Positions 10,001 through 61,400 are shown, counted from the first letter of the stretch. The stretch is 64,000 bases of DNA from Chlorokybus atmophyticus (GCA_009103225.1 RHPI01000249.1:310006-374005), one strand, 5' to 3'. Numbers and translations: made by a program. The notes: generated by a model from the letters alone, not told the origin.

Positions 10001-12697
10001 TTCAACCTCGGTCATGGTGAATGGCTACCTCACGGAGGAGTTTTCTCTCCAACGCAGCGACAGCGCTGCCCAATGGCACCGGCCTTGTTCGTCACAGCCA
10101 CGGAGGCCCTCGGCGCCATGCTCCAGGCGAAACCGTCTTGTCAAGGGCTTGTGCTCCCCGGTAACAGCCACCCTAGCGAGGCATCCCCTGATGAGGTCAG
10201 GTACTTTGCCTTTGCGGACGACACGGCTGTGTTGCTGGAGGTCTCTCAACAAGCCTTCCTAGCTTTTTCTTTGGTAATGAGCACCTACTGCCTAGCTTCG
10301 GATTCCTAGCTCAGTCTTCACAAGTCCATCGGTCTGCTCCTGGGCTCAGTGCGCCCCCTCCCTGCTCTAGACTGGGGGGTGAAGTGGCTGCAGCCGGGGG
10401 AAGCCACCACGCCGCTGGGGATACCTGTGGGCATCTCTCTGCAGCAACCACAGCTGTTCGAAGCCGTCCTGGAAAAGTTGCACAAGCGCATGCACATGTG
10501 GGCAGGCCATTACTTGTCATTGATGGGCAGAGCTTTGGTTGCCAACCAAGCAATACTCGCCTGTTTACGGTACACATCAGCGGTGGCTTCTCCATCCCAT
10601 GCACTCATGCAGGACTTGCGCAGAGAGTGCATAGGCTTTTCCTGGAGGTCTCAACCCTCCCCAGGCCCAGCCTCCATTACGGTCCGAGGCAAGGTGCAAT
10701 GGCAGGTGTTGTGTCTCCCTAAGAGCCTAGGGGGCTTGGGGTTGCTTGACCCCTCGCTGCAGTCGCAAGCGCTTCTGGCGAAGTGGGCGGCGAGGTTGGT
10801 TGATCCCACCTGGACCCCTTGGAAAGTTCTTGGCATCTCAGACCCACTCTGCCAGCAGCTGGCAGAGTGGGTCTCAGATGCGCGTGAGCCCACGATGCAG
10901 TGGATGCCTCCAGCAGCGCTCCTCTCCACAGACCTACTAGTGCACAACCGTGTTGCACGTCACTTGCAGGCCATCTTCAAGGCGTGGAAAGCCGTGGCCC
11001 CTACACACCGTCCCCCTCCCTCTACCTACGGGGAAACCCGGGTTTCCCCGTAGGTAGAGAGAGAAATGTTGGCGGAGGGCCCTCCGCCAACATTTATTCT
11101 TCAACGCCCACATTCGTCTGCCAGATGGCAAAGTGTTGGGTGTGGGGGAGTGTAGGCAGTGGTTTTGCCGGTGGGCTCGGGAGGGATTTCACAGGGTTTG
11201 CGACTTATCTGACCCACTCCTCCGGCGCCCATACACACGGCCGAGGAGCTCTACTACTGGGCCCCGCACTCCACGCACCAGCGTCTGGACACACTGTGGG
11301 CAGCCATCCCGCAGACATGGCTTGCTCTCCTCCATGCAGGACCTGGCCTGCCGGCGGCGGGGGAATGGTGGGCTGCTCCAGCAGCGGACGGCGTCTTGAC
11401 TTCAGTGCTCCTGGTCTCGTCCGTGAGCGCTGCGCAGTGTCGGGGTAGTCTCTTCCCCCTCTCAGGTCGGCAGCACAACACCCTCTTGGCCGGGGAAGAG
11501 GAGGGCCAGCTCTTCCTCCAGGCTGCATGTCGCGTTCATATCCTCCCCACCCCTTAGCGCTGGCGGAGGGGTCCCGCTCCTTTCTCTCCGGCCTGGCAGG
11601 AGCTGCCTGCAGCTTCTCGCTACCACGCTTGGTATCTTGCGGGTGGCGCGGCCCTTGCCGACGTCCATTATGATCCTCAAGCGGCAGGCTGGTCTGCCGA
11701 GCTCGGCAGACCAGCCTGGCTTTTTCACAACCGTTCCCACTCTGTGGGAGTATTCTTCCCACTTGGGCTATCGTGTTCTCTCTTGCAGGTCGGCATCCCT
11801 TGCGCCAGGCCCACAGCGCTGGAGAATGTTTGACCCAGCGTTACCCTGGCAGCAAATTTGGCGAGGCGTGCAGTTCTCTCCATCTCCGGGTACACACCGC
11901 AGACTTATGTGGCTCATTGCGCATAGCGCTCTCTTTACGGGAGAGCGGCTGCAATACATGTGTGCAGACGAAGAGTGCTTGACCTGCCACGCAGCTCCGG
12001 TAGAGACCACGCTACACATTTTCCATACATGCGAGGCTGCCACGCAGCTGTGGGGTTGGGTGCAGACTCTGTTTGCCAACCTTGGCGCTAGTCTGCGCAC
12101 CTGGGCGCATGCCATTGTTGGTGTCGGCACACCTGTCTCGCCCAGCAGCTTTTTGCTGATGTGGCGCCATATTCGCCCCATAGCACTATGGTGTTTATGG
12201 TGCCATCGCTGCGCTTATAGGTATGGCCGCTCATTACCATGGGCGGTGCTCCGTGCAAAGCTCTTCCAGGCAGTCTCCTTGCTCGCTAGGGAGGAGTGGC
12301 TGTCGGTCATCACCTCCCCGCTCAAGGATGACAAGCCCACCATTGCAATGTCCTCCTTCACTTCCACATGGGGCAGCAAGGGCTTCCTCTGCAAGGTCGC
12401 ACAGACCCTACCTTCCGAAGGTGGAGTGGCGACACTGGTCCTTTCTGGCGGACGATGGCTGATAGGTAGACAACTTCTTACACCATCCCGTGCTCGGGGA
12501 CACTTAGTGCTTGGGTTTACTCTTGTTCTGTTCGTTACTTGGCTGTTCTTCTTAGGCTGGCAGTCATAGTGCTGCTAGCCACCACGCAGTCTTAGTTAGA
12601 TCCTTTTTGCTAGTGGTTTTTTCTACTTTTCAACCTTGCTCGTCTTTATTAATATGATTCTCTGTTGGCCTTGAAGGAAAAAATAAAAGTACAAAAA
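7003..12697 (+). mobile_element. L1-clade non-LTR retrotransposon (LINE), degenerate; 5' boundary approximate
   Basis: ORF1-like VQCIFASAACATQVL...VRVQRWE...WISFLGMRPEL and a CFYCK knuckle remnant. ORF2 linker GAFINYSSNWRLSGE; RT motifs KSPDIDGFTAAFW, PITLLTLHYKILAK, LDCEKA, damaged RQxCP, FADD; LCLPKSLGGLGL; zf-RVT CLTCHAAPVETTLHIFHTC; A-rich 3' tail AAAAAATAAAAGTACAAAAA at about 12676-12697. Many frameshifts and stops. Confidence 0.93.
8632..8739. other. Assembly gap (108 N) flanked by poly-C
   Basis: Direct reading; true length unknown. Confidence 0.99.
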
Positions 12698-40410: not shown

Positions 40411-47101
<6,691 letters not shown>

Positions 47102-49970: not shown

Positions 49971-51740
49971 ATGGCGTTGATGTGGTCTGCGTCGTCTGTG
50001 AGTCGTCTGGTTGGCAATTTGGTCAAGGCGAGCCAATCTGGCGAACTCATTGCCCGACGCCTCCATCAACAGCCACGAGCAAGAAGGCGCAACTGTCCGC
50101 GAGGCAGCAGCAAGAACGCCAGCTTTCATGCACGCAAACCTCGACAGCTCACTGCTTGTAGTACCAGCTATCAGGTAATTGGAGACACGTAGCTGCTCTT
50201 CTCGTTCCTGTCTGGCGTTAAGCATGCTTCGGTGGTATATGAGCGTATGCGCTTGTTCGTTGTTTTCGCTTCATAGAATGCCAAAACGTTGGACACATGA
50301 CGCAGGTCGCTGCATACAATATGTCAGTGCCTGGGCCGTGAATGACCTTACGTACAGCATTGCACAAAAATGCCTTACGACTGGTGCAATGCTCTTTTTG
50401 CGAAAATGGTTGCTAACTCACTTACAGCTGAGCCCCTCAAGCATTGCTGCAGTGTAGGCTGCTTGTCTTAGCAATCAGTGCATGTGTGGGTTCCAAATGC
50501 TTTGGTGTCGTAGCTTGGAGAGGAAGCGTTTACTGGCGGATTCTAAATAGCGCGGCAGGTTCATAGGGTGGACTTCGCAAGCGAGACCTCCCCTGATCAT
50601 CATTTGCATGGAGACGGCAATGAGGCTCAACCCACAACAACATACGAGGTCGAGGTTGTCACTTCAATCGAGCGCGGAAGTGGGCTATCTGAGCCAGCTG
50701 GCGGCATACTGCTCAACTTCGTGCATGAGGACGGCACAGCTGTGCTGAGAAGGTTTGGCGCCAACAATCATCGCTTTCAACAGGTTGGTCGCGAATTGTG
50801 TCTATGCATGTTGCACTTGCCTTGGGCGTAGGCACTCACCTGCGCCTTGGCCAGGGTAGCGTTGACAGTTTTGCAGTGGAGGCTCCATCAACATCAGCAC
50901 AGCTTGCTGCGCTGTGGATTGCACCTCAGGTACTGCGCACATCAGCAAGGCAGTTGCGCACTTATCTTAATGCCAATCGGTTGGTTGTTGCACACAGTCA
51001 GGCAAGTGGAGGCCAGAGCGTGTGTCCATCAAACGTGGTGGTCAAGACCACATAGATGTCTTCAGGTGCGGCGAGCTGCTTGGCGATGGTGCAAAGCTGT
51101 CGGCAGCGGAGCTGAAGCCTGTGAGAGTCTCCCTTTCAGATACTGACCCGCAACACACTGCCGAGCTACTACAAATAGCACGGTTGCAGGTAAAGACGTG
51201 CTACTTGGTGTGCATGTATGGCATGTGCGCACACGAGACCACACAGTACTGCATTGCACAGGAAATGTTCATTCAATCTTTACCTCGCTGCCTAAACATC
51301 GGTGCTCTGCCAACATGCAGGGCTTGTCAGACTACCAATCCTTGAAGCAAAGACTTCTTGTGACAGATGTGAGCATCGCCCTTGCTGGCTCTGTCATTGC
51401 GGGCATCTTGGGGGGCACTGATGTCGCCAGGTCGTTCGGCATGGGTGCGAATGCTGGCCTCATCTACTTGCTTTTGCTTGAGAAAAGCGTGGACGCATTG
51501 CCCGGTGGCAGCCACGGAGGACGCAGCATGAATGACTTGGCGTCGCGCGTCCAAAACGTCATCAACAGCACGCCAGCGCGTGTTGCCGCTGTGGCTGCTT
51601 TGCTGCTATTTGCCGCACGAGGTTGGGGAGAAGGCGCGTCGGTGACAAAGCCGCAGCTTGTGGCTGCCGTGCTGGGCTTTCTGACGTATAAGGTTGCGGT
51701 GCTCGTGACCGCCGCAACAACACCAGCAGGCAATGAGTGA
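49971..51740 (+). CDS. Probable plastid protein: transit peptide, PLAT-like beta domain and AtpI/CGL160-like 4-TM domain
   Basis: Ser/Arg-rich N-terminus; YEVEVVTSIERGSGLSEPAGGILLNF...GSVDSF...LAALWIAP; then LSDYQSLKQRLL...SFGMG...YLLLLEKSVDAL...LGFLTYKVAV, resembling the recalled CGL160 C-terminus. Confidence 0.75.
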
Positions 51741-53875
51741 TTGCGGATGTGTAAGTACATAAGACACCAGCTTGCCTAGCGTTGTACAGAGTTGATAAAC
51801 TAGTGTGCGCTGCGTAGCTTGGCTTGTATAGTTCGTCAAAAGAGCTTGTACAGTTCATGTACATGTCGAGGTAGTTGTACAGTTACCCATGGCATTACGC
51901 GGCCATCATGAAAGCTGCTCAGCATAATAAGTGAGGGAATGCGCGCACAGCGACGAGCTTGGCTACAAAGAGAGTGTCATGCATGGCGTTTTGCGTGCAT
52001 GTTGTGATGACTGGTTCTGACATGTTGCAACGCTGCCTAGCGACAGCAATCACAGTGTCCGCAGTGTATTGTTGGCGGGTACAGAGTGGGCGGTGGCGGC
52101 GGTGTGGGGGAGGGAGGGGGAGTCGAGTTGGTCGGCTGTTGCTGCTGTTATCGCCGCCGCTGCAAGGACTGGCTCCTAACTACAGTCGCGCAATTTAAGA
52201 CTGCATTGCATATATGAATGACCCTGTGATTTGCTACGATGCTTTGTTGCTGCTTGGTCTAATTACCTCAATATTAAACCTATGCCTGCATAACTGACAG
52301 GGGGGCGATATAGAAAAGGTTGCGGGTAGAGGGTAGGTAGCACGCAAGTGCGTTGCTTAGCCCAGTGGTTGTGTTGTATATATGCAAAATGTGCATGTAG
52401 CATTGAGGTGAATATATCGTGCAATGCGTACTATGTTTTGTGCATGCGCAATTTTACATTGATCGGACACAGTGTCAGATGGGGTCGTAGCCGCTCTCCC
52501 AATTTCTTGGTGAAACCTTGATGGTATTTAATAGGTTGTGCCACTATATGACATGTGCCATCATGCGGATATCGTTGCATTTCCAACCAAGCCAGCCAGC
52601 ACGCATTGAAGTATATAACTATATACATCAAAGGCTGCATATGCATAGGGGAAATACATCATAGTCAATCACGTACACACACGCGTGCTCAGTGCGCAGA
52701 CACACAACCAATAAATGTATGTTCATGAGAGGATGCATATAGTTTGTTTAAGATTGAGAAACGTTGTGTAGGATGTAGACCATTTGCAGTCAATGCCGCC
52801 GAAGCATAGCGTGCACGCGGCAACATCAGGCAGAGGGAAGCAAGTCAACCGCATGTTGGGTTGGCATGTCATTCAGGTGTTATAAACGTCGCAAGTGGTG
52901 ATGACCGTGTGTGCGGCTACTGGCATGTGTCACAAGAGATTGCATATTAAGCGTTATATGCTGCGAGTCATAGTGTGCTTCTGTCCTATGCCTTTACCAT
53001 TATGCAAGTTGTTTGGCAGAATCTACGCCAACTGTCACTACATGTACATGCTGCCCTGTCTTCGTGCATATAAGTCTAAGCCCCATAGTGTAGGTGGTTA
53101 ACTTGTATCTATCTTGCTAGTGGTGTGATCATGTTGGCTTCATGGTTCAACACCAGGTTGCTTTCTGGTTGGCTTGCACTGTTTTGTGGCCCCTTTGTTC
53201 TACCCGGTAGGCTATTCTGGGTTCAGTGCATTGGTCTGCCCTGCTTCAGTGGCCTAGTGGCATTGAGCGGGGAGAAGTCACGTGGCACGGTGCGTGTCTG
53301 ACACCAGTACGGGCACCTGACTCAGCAGCTCGTATCCCCCGTGGCCCCATTGTACAAGCGCCCCGACACCATCCCATGAAACGGCAAGCTGACGGATAAA
53401 GGCAAGCTGTAGGGTCGTGTTTTGTTGCCGTCGCAACGCCTCCACATCTCTGAATGTGATCCATCAATCAGCATCCGACCGGTAGGCGCTCGAAGAGGGG
53501 TGTTCTACAGGCCATGTACCCAACACGAACTGATGTGAACTCATGACATGGCCGACGACGTGGTGAACGAAGTGGTGAACTTATGACCTAACCGACGACG
53601 GTGTGCGCCGGCGTTGCCGTATACGCGTGCACCATTTTCACGTGTTGCCAGTGATGGTCTCAACGCCGACGGCGCTTTTGCCTATACAGAGCCCTTTAAA
53701 TCGGAATTTCCGCCGACAGATCGGTCTTGTTCTCAATACAATGCATTGCTGATTGCACATAGTTTGCTGCAGTGTGCATCTGGCTGTGGGAATTGCATGG
53801 GTGTAACAAAAAGGTGTTGCTCCTGCAGTGGAGGCGGTGCTGGTGCCGGTGGCGGCGGCGGCGGCGGCCGTTGAG

Positions 53876-56800
53876 ATGAGGATATCCAGGCTTGTCCTCC
53901 TCTCCGTGCTGGTTGTATTAGCTGCAGTTGGTGCGCATGCCAGAAAGGAGGGCGGGAAGGTGGGCGGCTTCCCAGGCTTGACGCCCTTCAGCTTAGCTGC
54001 CACCGCTGCCGCTGGCGATGGAGCCTCCCAAGCTGCTTCCCGCATGCGATCCGGCAGCCAGCCTCAGGCACCACCTTTGTTACAGGCAAGCAACGGGGAT
54101 AAGCTTATTGTTGCTGGCAGATCTCACCACATAGAACAGATCACTTGACACACAATGCAGTCCAATGGAAGTACGCTGTGGCAAGAATGTCTTCATTGTG
54201 GACAGAACAAGCATGACTTCAAGCAGTCCAATTATCCAGCATGAACGACAGACCGCAAGTTGTGAACATCAAGCTCGTCGCCTTGTGCTTGTAAACCGTC
54301 GCATGGATATGAGACTGAAGTGCTCACTGTGTTCACACGTTATGTGCAACACAACAGCTGTTGCAGATACACAACAGCTGCCTTGTGCACAAACTTTAAC
54401 TTTTCAGCTTAGATCATGCACTGACGCTTCGGCTATCGTGCGTCGCAGGGCCCGCAAGTACAAACACACACGCTCGAGGGTGTGGAGTGCGTGCTGATTG
54501 ATGCCAGGAGCAAGCCTGGGCAGGCAGCGGCACTGGTGGAGCAGCTGGAGGCCTTCGGGTTGGCAAAGGGGGTGGCTGTTGCAGGCGATGTCGTGAGCTT
54601 CAAGCTGCCTCTCAGCCGTGTAGTTGAGCTGAACAGCCTGTCCGCACTCAGCTTCGCCATGCGATCACTTGCTGTCACGCATGTTGGCAAAGTCCAGTCT
54701 CAGGGCGACAAAGCCATGCGCAGCGACGTGCTCAAGGCCAGCGTTGCAGGCCTCACGGGTGCTGGAGTCAAAGTGGGCGTGCTTTCCGACTCATACAACG
54801 TAAGTGGTTCGCTGTGTTGTGTTGTGCAGTGCTGCGCGGGCGCACATGCTTAGCGTGTAGCACCACCCGTCTCATGCGTGGTGCTGCGCAGGCATTGAGA
54901 GGAGCAGCAAGCGATCTTGGTAGGTCTTCTGCATGCTTGAGGACATGCGCACTCTGTGCGTGTGCCTTCAACATCGCGTGTATGCTTGTGTGTAGGCGTG
55001 GTTTTGTGCTTGTGCTTGTGCTTGTGCTTGTGCTTGTGCTTGTGCTTGTGCTTATGCTTGTGCTTGTGTGGCACAAGCTCAGCCCTTGCTGACTTCTCGA
55101 CTTGCCGCAGCAAGCAAGGACCTTCCTCCAAATGTTAAAGTCCTCAAGGATCTGCCTTATGGGGCTGATGAGGGCAGGGGAATGCTACAGATAGTGCATG
55201 ATGTGGCCCCCGGTGCCGCACTCTACTTCTACACCGCGTTTGACGGGCTGGCCGATTTTGCCAACGGTATCATCACGCTTGCCGAGGCGGGCTGCAAGGT
55301 CATGTGAGTGCAACACTTAGAGTGTACACAATGCAATGGGGTCACATGCATAACATTGCATATATGTTACACACTAAACTATACACATATGCAGAGTGCA
55401 AGTGCACACACACACATCTCAACTGCTGTGCCACATCAAATAAGCACTTGCATGGTTCTCTGCAGAGTTGACGATGTTGTGTATTATGCCGAGCCGTTCT
55501 TTGAGGACGGCATTGTAGGTAAGCATTGATGTGAGTAACACACATTGACCACAGAGTGTTCGCCTTAACAGTGGCATAATGAGTGCCATCATACTGCAGC
55601 CCAAGCGATTGACCAAGTCAAGTCACAAGGCATTGCATATTTTTCAGCTGCTGGTAACCAGGGACGCGAATCCTGGGAGACAGGTACGATCTGTTAATAG
55701 CTGTGAAGTCAACGTGTCAACCTGTCAGCACCAAAGCGATGTTGTGTATGTGCGCAGTTAAGTGGAGGGAAGACAATGATGGTTACTACTTGTTTGATGC
55801 AACATTCAACATGCAACAATTCTATGTCCCACCTGGATCGTTCGTGACGTTCGTCATGCAAGTATGTCAATGCGTGCCCACAGCTCAGCAGCGTATGGAG
55901 CATGGTGCACTTATTCATGGTTGCCCTACTTACGCATGAGTTCACGCAGTGGGACCAACCGTTTGGCAAGTCTGCCTCAGACCTTGATCTTGAGGTGTTT
56001 TTGTACGACTCCAAAGCGGACGAGTTCTACCCTTACACGGCTGACAACGCAGATAACACCAATGGCGATCCGGTTGCTGTAAGTTCATTTCATGTATTGG
56101 TATTCAGCTCACCTTTGCGCCACCTCTTCATTGTGAAATGACTGATGTGCAGATTGTCAGCATCGAGAACAGCGATACTAGGCAGGGAGGCTATGTGTAC
56201 ATTGCCATAAAACGTTCCAGCGGCCCAAAGCCCGGCCGTGTCAAGTACGCTTGGTTTGGGTCGGGAACGCCGACAGAACACCTCACTGACTCTCCCGCAT
56301 CATTTGGTCACTCGCAGGCCGAGGGCGCGTTCTCGTGCGCAGCAGCATAGTAAGCATTTGTGTGTAACTGTTTGCTTTAAGCGTGTTGATGCAGATGCAT
56401 GTGGTGAGCTAACACGCCGTGACAACTTAACAGTTACCCGCAAACGCCGCCTTTTGGAACAAACCCAGCTGTGTTGGAAACCTTCAGCTCATTCGGCGGA
56501 ACTCCAACGATTTTCTCCTCATCTGGCGTTAGGTGCGGCTTTCATCCCGATGTTGTGGATAATATCTGATCGACACTTGCTTGCAAGTGTTAACAACTCT
56601 ACTACTGATTGCGTAGGCTTGCAAAGCCGATTGTGCGCTTGAAGCCAGATGGCTGCGGCCCAGGTGGGTTGCTGAGGAGGCAGAGTGGTTGTGGGCAGTG
56701 AGCCTCTCTCTGCTGTTGTGGTTATCCGCATCAGGAAATTGACTGGGTATGATGCAGATGGAGCCGACACGACATTCTTTGGGGGTCAAGACCGCGATGG

Positions 56801-58430
56801 CAACGGCAAGCCCAATTTCAGCGGCACATCTGCCTCTGCGCCACACATCGGCGCCTTGGCGGCGCTTCTGCGCCAAGCCAACCCTGCATTGACTCCCGAT
56901 CAAGTGTACGACATCCTGCGTCTAACGGCTGACAACATGAATCCTTACACCTCTCGCTTCAACTTTGGTGCAGGGTGAGTGAGACAGAATCGGCCTGTCT
57001 AGCACGTGTGGCGCACACAAAGCCACGCATTCCTGCATTCACAGGCGCGCATGCGCGCCAACATGCATGCCTGTAGTACATTGCTACGCACGCGCATCTG
57101 CACACGCACAGGCATAGACACACAGGTACAGCACTTACTCACAAGACTATGCGCTTACTCACTTCACAACTGTGTAGGTATGGTCTCGTGAACGCACTAT
57201 CGGCATACACGGCAGCAAAATGCCGGACTGCGTGCGGCAAGACGACGGTCACGTGGCCCTTCCATCTGGACGCCGGTTGCGGGCCGAGCGGCTATCATCT
57301 GGGCTGCAAGTCAGGTGTTTTGAGTCTCACAACCCCCTCGGGAACATACACTGTTGCCCTGCCGCTCCGCACGAGCTACTTGCTGCTGGCGAGCGCTGTC
57401 ACGACGAAGCTCACCGCATATGGCTGTCCCAACGGCGACACCGCAAGGTCCTTCTCCGCCGTCAACACGTCTTACACCATTAGCGCACGCAACGTGGTGA
57501 TGGGCTACGGCACCAACGGCAGGGCGAGCTTCACCACGTACTCGGCCACAGGAGCACGCATTGCGTCTAGCAGCTGTTCCACCAACACTAACGGCGTGCC
57601 GAGCTACTGCAACGGGACGCAATGCTGCACAATGCCTCTCGCAAAAGACTCCTCTCGCATCTCCTTCTCCGGTACAGGCAACTGCGGCGGGGCGGACATT
57701 CTGTACCCGCCTGCTGTGGTTAGCAGGATCACTCCCGCCAACACCAAGACCAACTATTTCCTCCGCCTTGACTTTTCTGCACCAGTCAGGTGGCAATGCG
57801 CGCGTGTCTACACATTGGGCCATCGTGTTCATGTCTCAATGTCAGTGTGTATAGCATTCAACCCAACCACTTACACATGCGGACCCACCTCTTAGGCCCA
57901 GGAGCACTCAAGCATGCGAAGCAATCGTCTGGTCTTTGGCAGCTTACAAATGCCGCTGGCCGCTCAACTTGCAGCCCTCCACACGGCTGCGGGATGCTTT
58001 TGGCCGCACGGCTGCTGATCAGGCAGTCATAGACTCCAGGTTCCCTACCTCAACCACACTGCAGCAAGCACTCATGTCGGTCGCCGAGCGCGCAGTAAGC
58101 ATAGTGTATGAGAATGAGCAGTTGTGCACACATGATGCTCAGAGCATTAACGTTGTCCTCACTGTGTGCAGTACTCACAGCTCGGAGTCAAAGCAGTTGT
58201 GGCTCTGCTGAACTCCTACCGAGTGCGCTATCCCCTATACCCCAAAGAAGTGCAACAGCAGTTCATTGATGCTCTTCAATCCTCCAAGCAAGGTACACAT
58301 GCATAGACTGAGTCTCTGGCAAGTGCTGTGTTTGCATGCCTGACTGGAATATTGCTCCGCAGCTGTAGAACAAACGAATACCTTTCTGAAGTACAATGCC
58401 AACCAGTGGTGCCCGCTCACAACATGTTGA
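53876..58430 (+). CDS. Secreted chimera: signal peptide, prodomain, bacterial-type S8/S53-like peptidase, GUB_WAK-like domain and PDF1-like domain (16 exons, intact frame)
   Basis: MRISRLVLLSVLVVLAAVGAHA; SQGDKAM..GLTGAGVKVGVLSDSYN; DEGRGMLQIVHDVAPGA; IVDDVVYYAEPFFEDG; YFSAAGN; WDQPF; LETFSSFGG; NFSGTSASAPH; CRTACGKTTVTWPFHLDAGCGPSGYHLGC...CNGTQCC; AFG...TLQQAL...LLNSYRVRYP...FIDALQSSK. All junctions splice in frame (the first donor is ambiguous). Confidence 0.88.
55004..55068. repeat. (TTGTGC)n hexamer microsatellite, intronic
   Basis: About 10 tandem units in intron 3 of the peptidase gene. Confidence 0.95.
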
Positions 58431-61400
58431 CAGCACCCGCGATCAGCGATCTAGCATAGATGGAGATTCATTGGCGAGTTGGACAGGTTTGCGGTATATT
58501 GCAATGGACTATTGGTGTAGCAATGGAACTGGTTACTTGGGTTCCTGTAGTTGTTGAGCTTAAGGATAAGGATGCTAGTAGAGACGTTGATACAGTCTAC
58601 TCGCGTTGGTGTCACGCCAGTTAACAGTGTAATTGCGTTATAAGAACCAGTCTTAAAGTATCACGTATGTGGGGGAAGTTCATGTCACTATAAGACCTGT
58701 CACATTCGTTGTATGAACCAGCAATGGTTGTAGAGCGGTTCTTGTAATGAATATGTTAATGTAGTTTACTGACTTGGTTGTCTGTAATCAAACATATGCT
58801 AATGTATGTTGACATTATGTTTATGCAATCACAATTTATGGTTTTTCTTATGAGAACCACCAGACAGAATGGTGTGGTGGTGGTTACAATGGGACTAGAA
58901 TACTGCGTTATGAGAAAGAAAAGGTGGAGGCAGGTGTAGTTGCTGTAACGAGCGTAGGCTGTAGTGAGTTTTGTTAGCCGCTAACGGCGGCGCGAGGGAT
59001 GAACATGCCTTAATCTGGCTTCACCCGTTATTAGCTTGGCTGCACATAGCAATAGCTCGACATTGCCAATCGCATTAATAGTATCAACATTGCAGGTGGA
59101 TGGGCATTTCGACTATGGTGGTGTTACGACTTGGCATAATGGTAGGCAGTTTCTGACATCAAGAACTTGTTTCACATTGATGCATTCATGCTGATTGGCT
59201 TACAATCATCGTTCTGCATTGTTTGGTTGATGGTACCATGGATAGTAATTAGTGTCCTGTATACTTGTCGTGCAACATGCGCCGCATGATGTGCATATCG
59301 TGCTGTACACACATGCAGCATGTGACATGCACGCATGCGCGCTCTATATTTTATAAAAAAACACCATATTGTGACTTTGGTAGGTATGCTGACAGAACTG
59401 AAAGTGATTGACAACCGGGGACTCAACAATACGAGACCTTCAATTGCGAAGGGTGGCTTCCACGCATTTCGTGACATTATGACATATGCTTGTCCGCTTG
59501 TGCTTATGCTTGTGAGCCTTGCATCCTTTGCTATAATGCTATGCAATACTATACCCTTTATGCAACAAAATTGTTACAATGTGTTAAATATATATATATA
59601 TACTGTTTGAACTGCTAAACGTGGGTGATTAAAGATAAACTTTGATGGTTGCCATAACAGCACATGCTATTTCAACGCAGGTAAATTGTAGGCGTTACAA
59701 CTTGACACAAATACATTATTTTTAAATATTCCGCAGACATGCTTTTTAAAGGCGCGTCATACAATGGTGCAATTGCAAGCTATTGATACAATCTTACCCT
59801 TTGTAAATTTTGCACAATAAGATGAATGAAAACTGTATTGACAATGATAATAATTGAAGGAGTACAATAATTAACCGTATTATTTTCATGATTGTTATAC
59901 AACAGCTGTATTTATGCTTGCACTACGGTGGGTGCATTTGTCATTAATAGTTTGGATACCCCACATTTAAAATGTTAACTTACCCATCATGTCCTCATGT
60001 ACTTAAGGCATTGTGAAAGATGAATCGTGCTAATTGTTGTTACAAGTGTAATCATGCTCGAGTAAACGTGCATCGCTTTGTCAAGTACGCGCATTACTCT
60101 TATCATGTATGGAATGAGGCTGAGGGTCAAAGGTATCTTATTTTATCTTCTAAGGAACATGCTAACATCCATATTACTATCGCTATCGCTGTCGCTGCTC
60201 TCCTCGCAGCTAGCAAGTGTGGGCGCGTATAATCTTCCACGCCGTCTCAGCTTTGTCAACCACGTCGGCATGCATGCGCGGGGCATTTCGTAGCGCGTTA
60301 CCCTGCACCAAGCAACATGCCGAAAGCGGTGATGCGCACATGAGCTCGAGATTGTGGTTGACAACACAAATACCGGTAATATCACTACCATTATCAACAG
60401 CGTTGTGTCTATATGTTCGTACGCGCGCCACGTGGTGGCTAATATGTATATATGCGTTTGCGTTGCGTTTCGCACGTGGCCGGAGGCCACTATGGACCAA
60501 CCATGAAAATTGGATGAAAGGCATTGGGGCGTATTAAGATGGTAAAGCCCAATGCATTCTATTCCCACCGTCGAGTGAGTAGCCATAAATGTGCGGCTGC
60601 GACATCTGCTGCAGCAGCTGCCGCTGCTCACCCCTTGGCGTCGGCATCTGCTGCCGCAGCGCAAGGGGTGAGCAACTGTAACATGAGGCCTCACGGACTC
60701 GACCATAAAGACCTAAATGGGGTTTTAAAGTTCCAATCCTTAGGCTTTTACGCTAATCATTACCCACTTCGTAACAGCAGCGGCAGCTTCAAACTTTGAC
60801 GGACACCAGCTTGGAGCGACGGCGGTGGGCCTTAGACATGCAAGGCGGCCACGCCCGCAGGCAACAGCTGCGGGGGCAATGCAGGCCAGGAGGGCGGCGG
60901 CGAGCAGCGGCAGGCTAAGGCGGCGCAGCCAGCCAGGCTAGAGGGGTTTGTTGTTTTATTGTTGTTTTTTGCCATTGTTCAGTGCTTGACCTCACGGCCT
61001 TGCTGCTGGGTAGAGCAGGAGGGCGGCGGCGAGCAGAGCCTGGCCAAGGCGGCGCCACTTAATCAGGCCAGGTGGGTTTTTTAAATAGCCAACCAATTAA
61101 TGCGTGCATGTGTTACCGTGTGCATATAGTGCGTGTTCGATTATGTATGTGAGCTTCGCAGGTGCGTGCGTGCGTGCGTGCGTGCGTGCGTGTGTCTGTG
61201 TGTGTTTGCATGTGTGTGTGTCTATAGCCATATTATATGTAGCTTTATTCTCATATATGTAATTCGTGAATGATAAGGAGCGCGCACAGTCAAGAGTTGT
61301 TAATGGCATAGTAGCTTCCATGAGGTGTTTGTACAAGCTCCATGAGAGATACACTTACGCTATGGAGGACGTGGTGCAAGTCGTAGATGATGAGTTACAT

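What the first reader, a model, noticed from the sequence alone, without database searches (positions are those of the whole stretch)
53876..58430. Intact three-domain secreted chimera: bacterial-type S53-like protease + WAK galacturonan-binding-like domain + PDF1-like domain
Seen: a 16-exon ORF that splices without stops, with a signal peptide, a peptidase domain, a Cys-rich domain (C-x3-CG-x4-WPF-x4-C-x4-Y-x2-C ... SARN ... CNGTQCC) and a C-terminal helical domain. Established (recalled): that Cys pattern defines GUB_WAK_bind (PF13947), the pectin-binding ectodomain of wall-associated kinases, and the tail resembles the conserved C-terminus of PROTODERMAL FACTOR 1. Inference: a cell-wall-targeted protease, possibly docking on homogalacturonan, assembled from a bacterial catalytic domain and plant wall modules. 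I do not know this architecture from any described protein.
Basis: partly seen in the sequence, partly recalled or inferred. Interest (0 to 1): 0.9.

Follow-up and report, generated by a model that had tools for sequence, protein, structure and literature searches.

The report
Algal secreted subtilase with WAK and PDF1 modules
This is a real, intact gene of an early-branching streptophyte alga (its closest relatives are Chlorokybus proteins) that joins a bacterial-type protease to two protein modules otherwise known from land-plant cell-surface proteins. It shows that those modules existed, attached to an enzyme rather than a receptor kinase, near the base of the plant lineage.

Summary
At 53876-58430 (+) 16 exons splice into a 903-aa stop-free ORF (14 GT-AG introns, one GC-AG). 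It has a signal peptide, a subtilase domain, a 10-Cys module and a helical tail.

- **Protease:** Pfam places it in Peptidase_S8, not S53. Its nearest relatives outside the alga are bacterial (40-43% identity). Glu217 sits where the motif order puts the subtilisin His.
- **Middle module (one exon):** it reaches the GUB_WAK_bind gathering score. Its model matches the N-terminal ectodomain of WAK1-5 (TM 0.65-0.75).
- **Tail:** it is homologous to PDF1_C. hhalign gives 93%, PDF1 is the only Swiss-Prot fold hit, and PF27764 is recorded on a 57%-identical paralogue. The same fold also occurs in bacterial proteins.

Three Chlorokybus proteins (969 aa, 915 aa, and a 437-aa fragment that starts in the last stretch of the protease) share the layout, and a 192-aa fragment spans the WAK-tail joint. 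The scan itself noted three more such genes elsewhere in this genome. I found no paper describing the architecture.

RNA contigs confirm three splice joints, including protease to WAK exon, but coverage is thin.

Homogalacturonan docking is doubtful, because Chlorokybus 'pectin' lacks alpha-1,4-galacturonan. Both C-terminal modules are basic (pI above 9), which suggests tethering to the anionic wall matrix.

Verdict: a new domain architecture built from known parts.

The parts
53876..58430 (+). Whole coding region: 16 exons, 903 codons plus TGA stop
   Evidence: Hand-built model, stop-free, canonical splice sites. It aligns end to end with P0002 and P0003.
53876..53941 (+). Predicted signal peptide (aa 1-22, AHA then RK)
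   Evidence: This is the only hydrophobic stretch of the protein (Kyte-Doolittle scan). Inferred from sequence features; no predictor was run.
53942..54718 (+). Linker and putative propeptide (aa 23-160; rest of exon 1, intron 1 with GC-AG donor at 54086, first part of exon 2)
   Evidence: The second half is conserved with the N-terminal region of bacterial homologues. It has no Pfam hit. The propeptide role is inferred. No RNA evidence covers this part.
54719..57220 (+). Subtilase catalytic domain (aa 161-585; exons 2-12 plus the first 14 codons of exon 13), interrupted by 11 introns
   Evidence: Peptidase_S8 on exon 12, E 8.9e-11. Bacterial S8 homologues are 40-43% identical. A profile search of PDB finds only S8 entries.
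54788..54790 (+). Asp184 codon (motif VLSDSYN), the subtilisin Asp32-like position
   Evidence: Asp in 112 of 119 bacterial homologues. Replaced by Asn in paralogue P0003.
55170..55172 (+). Glu217 codon (motif DEGRG), at the position where motif order puts the subtilisin catalytic His
   Evidence: DE is conserved in 107 of 119 bacterial homologues. Replaced by Ala in paralogue P0002. The equivalence to His64 is inferred from motif order, not from a structural superposition.
55656..55658 (+). Asn298 codon (motif AAGN), oxyanion-hole Asn as in subtilisins
   Evidence: Invariant in the 20-sequence family alignment. The AGN block aligns weakly to SAGNN of fervidolysin 1r6v and AGN of tomato SBT3 3i6s.
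56309..56311 (+). His437 codon (motif FGH), a family-invariant His of unknown role
   Evidence: Invariant G-H in alignment A4.
56829..56831 (+). Ser523 codon (motif GTSASAPH), the catalytic serine
   Evidence: Pfam and PDB alignments of the Ser block.
57221..57784 (+). WAK-ectodomain-like module (aa 586-773, 10 Cys, pI 9.2), all within exon 13 (57178-57789, phase 2-2)
   Evidence: GUB_WAK_bind scores 31.0 bits against a gathering score of 29.4. The Atlas feature hit is 0.96. The AF2 model has pLDDT 84.7. The top 22 Swiss-Prot fold hits are all WAK/WAKL N-terminal ectodomains. Atlas TM reaches 0.75, to streptophyte clusters only.
57785..58427 (+). PDF1_C-like helical tail (aa 774-903, 4 Cys, pI 9.55; end of exon 13 and exons 14-16)
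   Evidence: 57% identical to the tail of P0001, which carries a precomputed PF27764 hit. hhalign to plant PDF1_C gives 93%. A model of the P0001 tail (pLDDT 90.5) hits only PDF1 Q9S728 182-306 in Swiss-Prot. Atlas TM is 0.79.
56975..57177 (+). Intron 12, between the protease exon 12 and the exon carrying the WAK module
   Evidence: A spliced joint 56974/57178 is seen in one RNA contig of run X1, with 21 nt on the far side.

Best explanation
The gene encodes a secreted pre-pro-subtilase that stays attached to the alga's extracellular matrix through two C-terminal binding modules.

**Shown**
- One open reading frame joins a signal-peptide-like N-terminus, a region shared with the N-termini of bacterial homologues, an acidic catalytic domain (pI 4.6) of a bacterial-type subtilase subfamily, a basic 10-Cys beta-rich module with the fold of the WAK receptor ectodomain, and a basic 4-Cys helical module homologous to the C-terminal domain of PROTODERMAL FACTOR 1.
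- There is no transmembrane segment, EGF repeat or kinase.
- This copy keeps all five residues that are conserved in the subfamily: Asp184, Glu217, Asn298, His437 and Ser523.

**Inferred**
- The conserved N-terminal region acts as a propeptide that is removed on activation.
- Ser523 is the nucleophile, with Glu217 as general base in place of the usual His.
- The two disulfide-rich, positively charged modules hold the enzyme on the anionic, sulphated, uronic-acid-rich wall and mucilage polymers of the alga (or on a wall protein). Proteolysis would then act locally on wall or matrix proteins.

**Evolution (partly shown)**
- The catalytic domain came from the same pool as bacterial enzymes that carry interchangeable C-terminal binding modules.
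- In the alga it gained 11 spliceosomal introns and streptophyte-type modules, then duplicated into a small family.
For: - **Continuous ORF and splice sites:**
- **The protease-WAK fusion is written in a single exon:** exon 13 encodes the last helix of the subtilase domain (YGLVNALSAYTAA, aligned with bacterial GYGFIQADRA) and runs straight into the WAK module. An RNA contig also joins exon 12 to exon 13.
- **Same layout in relatives:** three Chlorokybus proteins share it, plus a fragment that spans the WAK-tail joint.
- **S8 assignment and bacterial relatives:**. In a tree, the window protein, P0002 and P0003 form one clade (SH-aLRT 100) among prokaryotic sequences.
- **Bacterial relatives carry varied C-terminal modules:** cellulose-binding, He_PIG, PKD, PPC, RTX and T9SS tails.
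- **WAK module:**
- **PDF1_C tail:**
- **Charge and topology:** WAK module pI 9.2 (paralogues 8.95-8.98), tail pI 9.55, catalytic domain pI 4.6; no hydrophobic stretch beyond the N-terminus.
- **Subfamily residues:** conserved in this copy and in 107-112 of 119 bacterial homologues.
- **Wall chemistry:** Chlorokybus wall polymers are anionic and sulphated (PMC10953000).
Against: - No activity, localisation or binding has been measured for any member.
- RNA evidence is thin. Depth is low, exons 1-8 and the exon 13/14 joint are not covered, and some contigs retain introns 9-11.
- The equivalence of Glu217 to the subtilisin His rests on motif order and on my recall of subtilisin and kumamolisin sequences. 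The N-terminal half of the domain does not align to the S8 profile or to solved structures.
- Two paralogues lack one of the presumed catalytic residues (Ala for the Glu in P0002, Asn for the Asp in P0003), so the family may not depend on proteolysis.
- The tail of P0003 is acidic (pI 5.5), so a purely electrostatic anchor does not fit all members.
- The function of PDF1_C is unknown, and ligand binding by WAK ectodomains is disputed (PMC11684076).
- The organism is inferred only from the nearest proteins.
Confidence: 0.6

Rival explanations
1. One reading: the WAK module docks the protease on homogalacturonan (de-esterified pectin), as proposed for land-plant WAKs.
For: The module reaches the Pfam gathering score for the family named 'galacturonan-binding'. 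It has the fold of the WAK1-5 ectodomain. In-vitro pectin and oligogalacturonide binding by WAK ectodomains is reported in work cited in PMC11684076. The module is basic, which suits a polyanion.
Against: Chlorokybus 'pectin' released nothing with endo-polygalacturonase or Driselase, and its authors conclude it lacks alpha-1,4-galacturonan (PMC10953000). WAKs are genetically dispensable for oligogalacturonide responses, and the predicted WAK1 module is negatively charged (PMC11684076). Identity to land-plant modules is only 15-30%, so ligand specificity cannot be transferred.
Confidence: 0.1
2. The C-terminal modules are not wall anchors. They serve as substrate-recognition or protein-protein interaction domains, or as secretion or maturation extensions that are cleaved off, as happens with C-terminal extensions of many bacterial subtilases.
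For: Bacterial members of the same subfamily carry many interchangeable C-terminal modules, some of them sorting or pre-peptidase domains (PPC, T9SS and PEP-CTERM tails). In land plants the WAK module sits in receptors, which fits ligand recognition. The tail of paralogue P0003 is acidic.
Against: The WAK-plus-tail pair is conserved in all paralogues, with invariant Cys positions. That argues for a folded functional unit in the mature protein rather than a disposable extension. No data bear on cleavage.
Confidence: 0.2
3. The protein is a pseudo-protease: a structural or sensing wall protein that uses a dead subtilase scaffold.
For: No His at the canonical position. Paralogues P0002 and P0003 each lack one presumed catalytic residue. 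The N-terminal half of the domain is too divergent to align with the S8 profile.
Against: This copy keeps Asp184, Glu217, Asn298, His437 and Ser523 within motifs that are conserved in over 100 bacterial homologues. That pattern is expected for an active enzyme family. A Ser-Glu-Asp triad on the subtilisin fold is an established catalytic solution in clan SB (PMC11593635).
Confidence: 0.07
4. The three-part protein is a gene-model artefact: two neighbouring genes (a protease, and a WAK-PDF1 protein) wrongly joined.
For: No RNA contig covers the 57789/57896 joint or the 5' exons. Several contigs are unspliced.
Against: The end of the protease domain and the WAK module lie in the same exon without a stop. 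An RNA contig joins exons 12 and 13, and another joins 14 and 15. The conserved motif DFSAP-x-RP spans the exon 13/14 joint and is shared with P0001 and P0002; P0003 keeps only the PPRP part. Fragment P0015 spans the same joint. Retaining intron 13 would run into a stop at 57893.
Confidence: 0.03

Closest known systems
Bacterial modular S8 peptidases of the 'SDSYN / DEGR / GTSAAAPH' subfamily (e.g. Fibrella, Spirosoma, Oculatella, Blastopirellula proteins P0025, P0037, P0059, P0084)
   Same: 40-43% identity over the roughly 500-residue N-terminal region plus catalytic domain. Same conserved motifs, including Glu at the inferred base position. Same overall plan: signal peptide, conserved N-terminal region, catalytic domain, then C-terminal binding or sorting modules.
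   Different: The algal gene has 15 spliceosomal introns. Its C-terminal modules (WAK-like, PDF1_C-like) were found in none of the 119 bacterial homologues examined; those carry CBM, He_PIG, PKD, PPC, RTX or T9SS modules instead.
Land-plant wall-associated kinases (WAK1-5, WAKLs) and WAK-type receptor-like proteins
   Same: The whole N-terminal ectodomain module is shared: the GUB_WAK_bind region plus the following Cys-rich beta region, about 190 residues. Evidence is the Pfam gathering score, TM 0.65-0.75 and a conserved Cys/Gly/Pro-Phe pattern.
   Different: No EGF repeats, transmembrane helix or kinase. The module sits C-terminal to an enzyme rather than at the N-terminus of a receptor. Sequence identity is only 15-30%. 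The module is basic, whereas the WAK1 one is reported as acidic (PMC11684076).
PROTODERMAL FACTOR 1 (Arabidopsis PDF1, Q9S728) and the Pfam family PDF1_C (PF27764)
   Same: The C-terminal helical domain of about 125 residues is shared. hhalign gives 93% with 31% identity to a plant PDF1_C cluster. PDF1 is the sole significant Swiss-Prot fold hit. Shared motifs are around (T/S)-(L/I)-Q-x-A-L and A-A-L-L-N-S.
   Different: No proline-rich N-terminal region. The domain is the tail of a protease. The algal tails have two extra Cys at the very C-terminus (W-C-P-L-x-x-C). A C-P-L motif near the end is also present in bacterial look-alikes P0144 and P0145, but the one plant-type sequence examined, P0146, lacks it.
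Sedolisins (MEROPS S53: sedolisin, kumamolisin, TPP1)
   Same: Subtilisin-type fold family (clan SB) with a Glu instead of His as general base. The Glu lies 12 residues before the A-P-G-A strand, as I recall for kumamolisin (memory, not tested).
   Different: No Asp four residues after the Glu (Met here). The subtilisin-type Asp184 and oxyanion Asn298 are kept. No S53 entry appears among the 60 best (listed) of 114 PDB profile hits. No Pro-kumamolisin activation domain hit.
Land-plant subtilases (SBT1-5, e.g. tomato SBT3, cucumisin)
   Same: Secreted pre-pro-subtilases acting in the cell wall, also thought to derive from a bacterial transfer (PMC6713707).
   Different: A different subfamily. 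SBT1-5 have the canonical Asp-His-Ser triad, a PA domain insert and an Fn3-like C-terminal domain, and are reported only from Coleochaetophyceae, Zygnematophyceae and embryophytes (PMC6713707). Here only the Ser block aligns.

Membership tests
Peptidase S8 (subtilases, Pfam PF00082, clan SB) | Profile match above the curated threshold | tested here: met
   Exon 12 alone scores 42.1 bits against a cut-off of 21.8, E 8.9e-11. Paralogues score 32-43 bits. PF00082 also covers S53 proteins (from my knowledge), so this shows clan membership rather than S8 as opposed to S53.
Peptidase S8 (subtilases, Pfam PF00082, clan SB) | Catalytic Ser in the G-T-S-x-x-x-P-H block | tested here: met
   GTSASAPH with Ser523. 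It aligns to the Ser block of mirolase, fervidolysin, subtilisin BPN' and others.
Peptidase S8 (subtilases, Pfam PF00082, clan SB) | Catalytic Asp after the first beta strand, and oxyanion Asn in an A-G-N block | tested here: inconclusive
   VGVLSD(184)SYN and SAAGN(298) are present and conserved in the subfamily. The AGN block aligns weakly to solved subtilases. The Asp block does not align to any profile, so its equivalence is inferred from motif order.
Peptidase S8 (subtilases, Pfam PF00082, clan SB) | Catalytic His in an H-G-T-H-type block between the Asp and the Asn | tested here: not met
   The corresponding block reads D-E(217)-G-R-G-M. DE is conserved in 107 of 119 bacterial homologues. 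An invariant His (His437) lies elsewhere and its role is unknown.
Sedolisins (MEROPS S53) | Glu-x-x-x-Asp pair on one helix, and Asp instead of Asn in the oxyanion hole | tested here: not met
   Glu217 is followed at +4 by Met. Asn298 is kept. The definition of the feature comes from established knowledge of S53 (see PMC2635056, PMC11593635).
Sedolisins (MEROPS S53) | Sequence relationship to solved S53 enzymes, and a pro-kumamolisin-type activation domain | tested here: not met
   The 60 best of 114 PDB hits of the family profile, which are the ones listed, are all S8 entries. The N-terminal exons have no Pfam hit.
GUB_WAK_bind (PF13947) / WAK ectodomain module | Profile match above the gathering score | tested here: met
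   31.0 bits against 29.4, on residues 15-59 of exon 13; only just above threshold. P0001 scores 31.1. P0002 and P0003 fall below (24.8 and 21.1).
GUB_WAK_bind (PF13947) / WAK ectodomain module | Fold of the WAK N-terminal ectodomain | tested here: met
   The AF2 model of the window's own exon 13 has pLDDT 84.7 and pTM 0.82. The top 22 Swiss-Prot fold hits are all WAK/WAKL; WAK1 6-234 scores E 8e-10, and TM by query for the top hits is 0.65-0.69. All Atlas rows are GUB_WAK clusters, TM up to 0.75 over 188 residues. Both sides of these comparisons are predictions; no solved structure matches.
GUB_WAK_bind (PF13947) / WAK ectodomain module | Binding of galacturonan or pectin | not testable with these tools
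The literature argues against the ligand being present in Chlorokybus (PMC10953000) and questions the assignment in Arabidopsis (PMC11684076).
Wall-associated receptor kinases (WAK/WAKL) | EGF repeats, a transmembrane helix and a cytoplasmic kinase domain | tested here: not met
   No EGF or Pkinase Pfam hits on any exon. No hydrophobic stretch beyond the signal peptide. The protein ends 130 residues after the module.
PDF1_C (PF27764) | Profile match to the family model | tested here: inconclusive
   The Pfam copy available to me lacks PF27764 (no hit even for P0001). The collection's precomputed annotation lists PF27764 on P0001, whose tail is 57% identical to the window's. It is not listed on P0002. 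The window's own tail could not be scanned whole because it is split over three exons.
PDF1_C (PF27764) | Homology to plant PDF1 C-terminal domains by profile and by fold | tested here: met
   hhalign of the algal tails against a plant-type PF27764 cluster gives 93% probability and 31% identity over 104 columns. The window tail against P0146 gives BLASTP E 1.5e-4. Foldseek finds PDF1 Q9S728 182-306 as the only hit with E below 0.1, TM by query 0.66. Atlas TM is 0.79 to a PDF1_C cluster. The model used was of paralogue P0001, not of the window protein.

The most novel reading that the evidence does not exclude
In the deepest-branching streptophyte lineage, the WAK ectodomain module and the PDF1_C domain occur together as the anchoring end of a secreted bacterial-type protease, in an alga whose wall has no homogalacturonan. 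On this reading the WAK module began as a general anchor or binding module for extracellular enzymes, recognising anionic wall polymers or wall proteins. Only later was it recruited into receptor kinases, with pectin sensing as a secondary acquisition. PDF1_C would itself be of bacterial origin, since it has close structural and sequence look-alikes in Planctomycetota, Actinomycetota and Acidobacteriota.
Probability: 0.25. Interest if true: 0.8.

Novelty: new variant of a known kind. Interest (0 to 1): 0.6.

Why it matters
WAK ectodomains and PDF1 are land-plant cell-surface components whose biochemical functions are still unsettled. WAKs as pectin receptors are now contested, and the PDF1 C-terminal domain has no known function.

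Finding both modules in one protein, attached to an enzyme instead of a kinase, gives a simpler system in which to ask what they bind. The host lineage split from the ancestors of land plants at the base of the Streptophyta and lacks classical homogalacturonan.

The gene is also a clear example of a bacterial-type catalytic domain that became fully 'eukaryotised': 11 introns in the catalytic part, a duplicated family, and bacterial accessory modules replaced by lineage-specific ones.

The conserved Glu at the inferred His position marks a large, uncharacterised, mostly bacterial subtilase subfamily whose catalytic mechanism has not been studied.

Tried and rejected
1. **Pfam on single exons.** Only exons 12 and 13 gave hits. 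Exons 1, 2, 4, 7, 8, 9, 14 and 15 gave none even at E up to 1 (exons 14 and 15 were re-run at E up to 10).
2. **Atlas search with exon 14 alone (66 aa).** It returned ankyrin-like clusters sharing only about 85 features. I treated these as noise from a short helical fragment.
3. **Word-indexed homology searches for the tail.** These were nearly blank. With P0001 residues 305-437 only the query came back. With the three-tail profile there were only three hits, at E 1-6. They still supplied P0144-P0146 for pairwise and profile tests.
4. **Was the tail inherited together with the bacterial protease?** No. None of the 119 bacterial homologues matches an HMM of the algal tails. An Atlas row for an actinobacterial S8 peptidase reached only TM 0.56.
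5. **Solved structures.** None matches the WAK module (best TM 0.28) or the tail (best E 1.1).
6. **NCBIfam.** Only sub-threshold mycosin and dentilisin hits on the Ser block.
7. **Genomic locus of P0003, to compare intron positions.** It is not on record.
8. **Paralogues in the window.** There are none.
9. **Bacterial contamination.** Rejected on the introns and on green-lineage neighbours (CGL160_C).
10. **Donor of the protease.** Not resolvable. The algal clade is well supported, but its sister group is not, and the data set holds no other eukaryotes, so it does not test transfer against vertical descent.
11. **Steps not taken.** The spliced protein was never sent whole to any remote tool, because it has no reference. 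No full-length Pfam, structure or exact-sequence look-up was done for the window protein itself.

Full report
**1. The observation**

I translated 53700-58600 in three frames and joined the coding pieces at canonical splice sites. The result is 16 exons on the + strand, from the ATG at 53876 to the TGA at 58428-58430. The CDS is 2712 nt (903 codons) with no internal stop.

Fourteen introns are GT-AG. Intron 1 uses a GC donor (CAG|GCAAGC at 54086). Introns are 70-363 nt long.

The model is not a chance ORF. It aligns from end to end with independently predicted proteins P0002 (969 aa) and P0003 (915 aa). Over the first 585 residues or so it also aligns with bacterial proteins, and that alignment runs through the very short exons 3, 5, 6 and 11 without gaps at the joints.

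**2. RNA evidence**

Three small runs of one organism and one study (2021) hold parts of the stretch. I laid them on 53600-58800.

- Run X1 gives low-depth contigs with spliced joints at 56532/56617 (intron 10), 56974/57178 (intron 12, from the protease exon to the WAK exon, only 21 nt on the far side) and 58094/58172 (intron 14).
- Other contigs of the same run are unspliced across introns 9, 10 and 11. These are either pre-mRNA or DNA carried in the library.
- Nothing covers exons 1-8 except contigs drawn by a (GCTTGT)7 microsatellite in intron 3 and by part of intron 4. Nothing covers the 57789/57896 joint.

The gene is therefore transcribed and spliced as predicted where it can be seen, but the full-length mRNA has not been shown.

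**3. Evidence for the fusion in the DNA itself**

Exon 13 (57178-57789) begins with the last helix of the subtilase domain. The sequence YGLVNALSAYTAA aligns with the conserved GYGFIQADRA of the bacterial enzymes. The exon then runs without interruption into the Cys-rich module. So the protease and the WAK module are joined inside one exon.

It is not a clean module-sized cassette, however, because 14 of its codons belong to the protease.

The motif DFSAP-x-RP spans the exon 13/14 joint. It is shared with P0001 and P0002, while P0003 keeps only the PPRP part. A fourth Chlorokybus fragment, P0015, spans the same joint.

**4. The protease**

- **Pfam:** exon 12 hits Peptidase_S8 (E 8.9e-11).
- **Solved structures:** a profile of 20 family members finds 114 solved structures. 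The 60 listed are all subtilases, and the match is confined to the Ser block plus a weak A-G-N block. No sedolisin appears among them.
- **Nearest relatives outside the alga:** prokaryotic or metagenomic S8 peptidases at 40-43% identity. The named ones are Fibrella, Spirosoma, several cyanobacteria and Blastopirellula.
- **Tree:** on 121 catalytic domains, the window protein, P0002 and P0003 form one clade (SH-aLRT 100) whose sister group is unresolved.

The data set consists of the best hits of one query and holds no other eukaryotes. It shows one origin followed by duplication within the alga. It does not test the donor, or transfer as such.

The subfamily has its own signature: V-G-V-L-S-D-S-Y-N, D-E-G-R-x-M, S-A-G-N, an invariant G-H, and G-T-S-A-x-A-P-H.

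By motif order, the Glu (Glu217 here) sits where subtilisins have the catalytic His. From my memory of kumamolisin, the Glu-to-APGA spacing is that of sedolisins. Against S53, the sedolisin Asp at +4 is a Met, and the subtilisin-type Asp184 and Asn298 are kept.

I therefore file the domain as a divergent clan-SB subtilase with an inferred Ser-Glu-Asp arrangement, not as S53. The His equivalence is an inference.

This copy keeps all five conserved residues. P0002 has Ala at the Glu, and P0003 has Asn at the Asp.

**5. The middle module**

- **Pfam:** exon 13 reaches the gathering score of GUB_WAK_bind, 31.0 against 29.4 bits.
- **Protein language model:** the features place it with GUB_WAK clusters (0.96, 200 shared features).
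- **Exhaustive phmmer search of 1.84 billion representatives:** only 17 hits. They are the Chlorokybus proteins, land-plant WAK-type proteins (Cryptomeria, Diphasiastrum, Carpinus) and unnamed metagenomic or run-assembled proteins.
- **Alignment:** 15 of these share the Cys/Gly/Pro-Phe pattern over the whole 190 residues.
- **Model:** AlphaFold2 on that alignment, with the window's own exon as target, gave pLDDT 84.7 and pTM 0.82.
- **Fold search, Swiss-Prot models:** Foldseek returned WAK1-5, maize WAK17 and the WAKLs as the top 22 hits. WAK1 residues 6-234 score E 8e-10, and TM by query for the top hits is 0.65-0.69.
- **Fold search, Atlas:** only streptophyte GUB_WAK clusters, TM up to 0.75.
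- **Solved structures:** none matches.

The module therefore corresponds to the whole N-terminal WAK ectodomain, not just the 64-residue Pfam core.

**6. The tail**

The Pfam copy I could query lacks PF27764. The other evidence is as follows.

- The collection's precomputed annotation lists PF27764 (PDF1_C) on P0001. Its tail is 57% identical to the window's over 138 residues.
- The Atlas feature search puts a PDF1_C cluster first.
- hhalign of the three algal tails against a plant-type PF27764 cluster gives 93% probability.
- The window tail itself matches that cluster's representative at BLASTP E 1.5e-4.
- A model of the P0001 tail (pLDDT 90.5) finds Arabidopsis PDF1 residues 182-306 as the only meaningful hit among 550,129 Swiss-Prot models (E 1.7e-3, TM 0.66; the next hit has E 0.9).
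- The same model has TM 0.79 to a 328-member plant PDF1_C cluster.

Unexpectedly, that search also gives TM 0.74-0.77 to bacterial clusters from Actinomycetota, Acidobacteriota (DUF7507/DUF11 surface proteins) and Gemmatimonadota.

The sequence searches found bacterial relatives too. P0145 belongs to Planctomycetota MAGs, and P0144 lies on a compact prokaryote-type contig. These are as similar to the algal tails as the plant domain is: 28.7 and 21.1 bits against 24.7. Both share a C-P-L motif near the C-terminus with the algal tails.

The tail is thus PDF1_C-like, but 'plant module' is too narrow a description.

**7. Organism and family**

The closest proteins all come from the JGI/EukProt set of Chlorokybus atmophyticus, at 49-65% identity. 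They are therefore paralogues, or the window comes from a related genome. The window protein itself is not in the collections I searched.

The scan's own notes list three more such chimeras on other pieces of this genome. I did not see those sequences.

Neighbours in the window are eukaryotic and of the green lineage: a GH2 beta-galactosidase, a CGL160_C exon and a retroelement.

I found no paper that mentions this architecture.

**8. How it probably works**

- The protein has one N-terminal hydrophobic segment and no other, so it should be secreted rather than membrane-bound.
- The catalytic domain is acidic (pI 4.6).
- The WAK module (pI 9.2, 10 Cys) and the tail (pI 9.55, 4 Cys) are basic and disulfide-rich. 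The WAK modules of all paralogues are basic as well.
- Chlorokybus wall 'pectin' is anionic, rich in GlcA and GalA and partly sulphated, but it is resistant to endo-polygalacturonase and Driselase. Its authors conclude it contains no alpha-1,4-galacturonan (PMC10953000).
- In Arabidopsis, WAKs are dispensable for oligogalacturonide responses, and the predicted WAK1 module is acidic (PMC11684076).

I therefore favour tethering of an active protease to the anionic matrix, or to a wall protein, over docking on homogalacturonan. Bacterial relatives that carry cellulose-binding, PKD, PPC or sorting modules at the same position show that this subfamily is routinely targeted by swapping its C-terminal modules.

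None of this has been measured. The acidic tail of P0003 and the missing catalytic residues in two paralogues are real caveats.

**9. Verdict**

The 'S53' label, the 'plant-only' origin of the tail and the homogalacturonan ligand are not supported.

This is a new domain architecture built from known parts. It is present in public protein sets but, as far as I could find, undescribed. Its main interest lies in what it says about the early history of the WAK and PDF1 modules.

Noticed in passing
window 55008-55049 (intron 3): A (GCTTGT)7 microsatellite attracts many unrelated RNA contigs (depth up to 641 in run X3). This makes the bin 54992-55165 look highly expressed when it is not.
   Followed up: partly
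window 56331-56865: RNA-run contigs that retain introns 9, 10 and 11 coexist with spliced ones. Two intronic differences from the window are seen: C>A at 56431 and G>A at 56549. The cause could be pre-mRNA, DNA carry-over or another allele.
   Followed up: no
P0002 and P0003 (Chlorokybus paralogues), aligned to window codons 55170-55172 and 54788-54790: P0002 has Ala where the subfamily has the conserved Glu. P0003 has Asn where it has the conserved Asp. Some paralogues may be catalytically dead while keeping both C-terminal modules.
   Followed up: partly
P0144 (locus L001 3171-3443), P0145/P0147 (Planctomycetota MAGs); Atlas rows 2-7: The PDF1_C fold has close look-alikes in bacteria (TM 0.74-0.77, rmsd about 2 A). 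They occur as small stand-alone proteins or at the ends of large surface proteins. Some share a C-P-L motif near the C-terminus with the algal tails. The origin of plant PDF1_C may be bacterial.
   Followed up: partly
L001 2255-3443: P0144 (90 aa) overlaps the end of an upstream 323-aa ORF by 56 nt. The PDF1_C-like piece may be the C-terminus of a longer protein split by a frameshift or a gene-calling error.
   Followed up: no
window 41249-46191 (+): Long exons of a GH2 beta-galactosidase gene (Glyco_hydro_2_N at E 1e-32; Bgal_small_N at E 2.5e-18) lie about 8 kb upstream of the protease gene.
   Followed up: no
window 51198-51737 (+): An exon with a CGL160_C domain (E 7.6e-12), a family named as conserved in the green lineage. 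This supports a green-algal nuclear context.
   Followed up: no
window 11637-12566 (+): An ORF with a zf-RVT domain (E 5e-9) lies in a GC-rich block (6-12 kb, GC 0.57-0.60). It is probably a non-LTR retroelement.
   Followed up: no
window 56309-56311 (His437): An invariant Gly-His in the whole subfamily, bacterial members included, lies between the A-G-N block and the Ser block. Its role is unknown. It could matter for a mechanism that lacks the canonical His.
   Followed up: no
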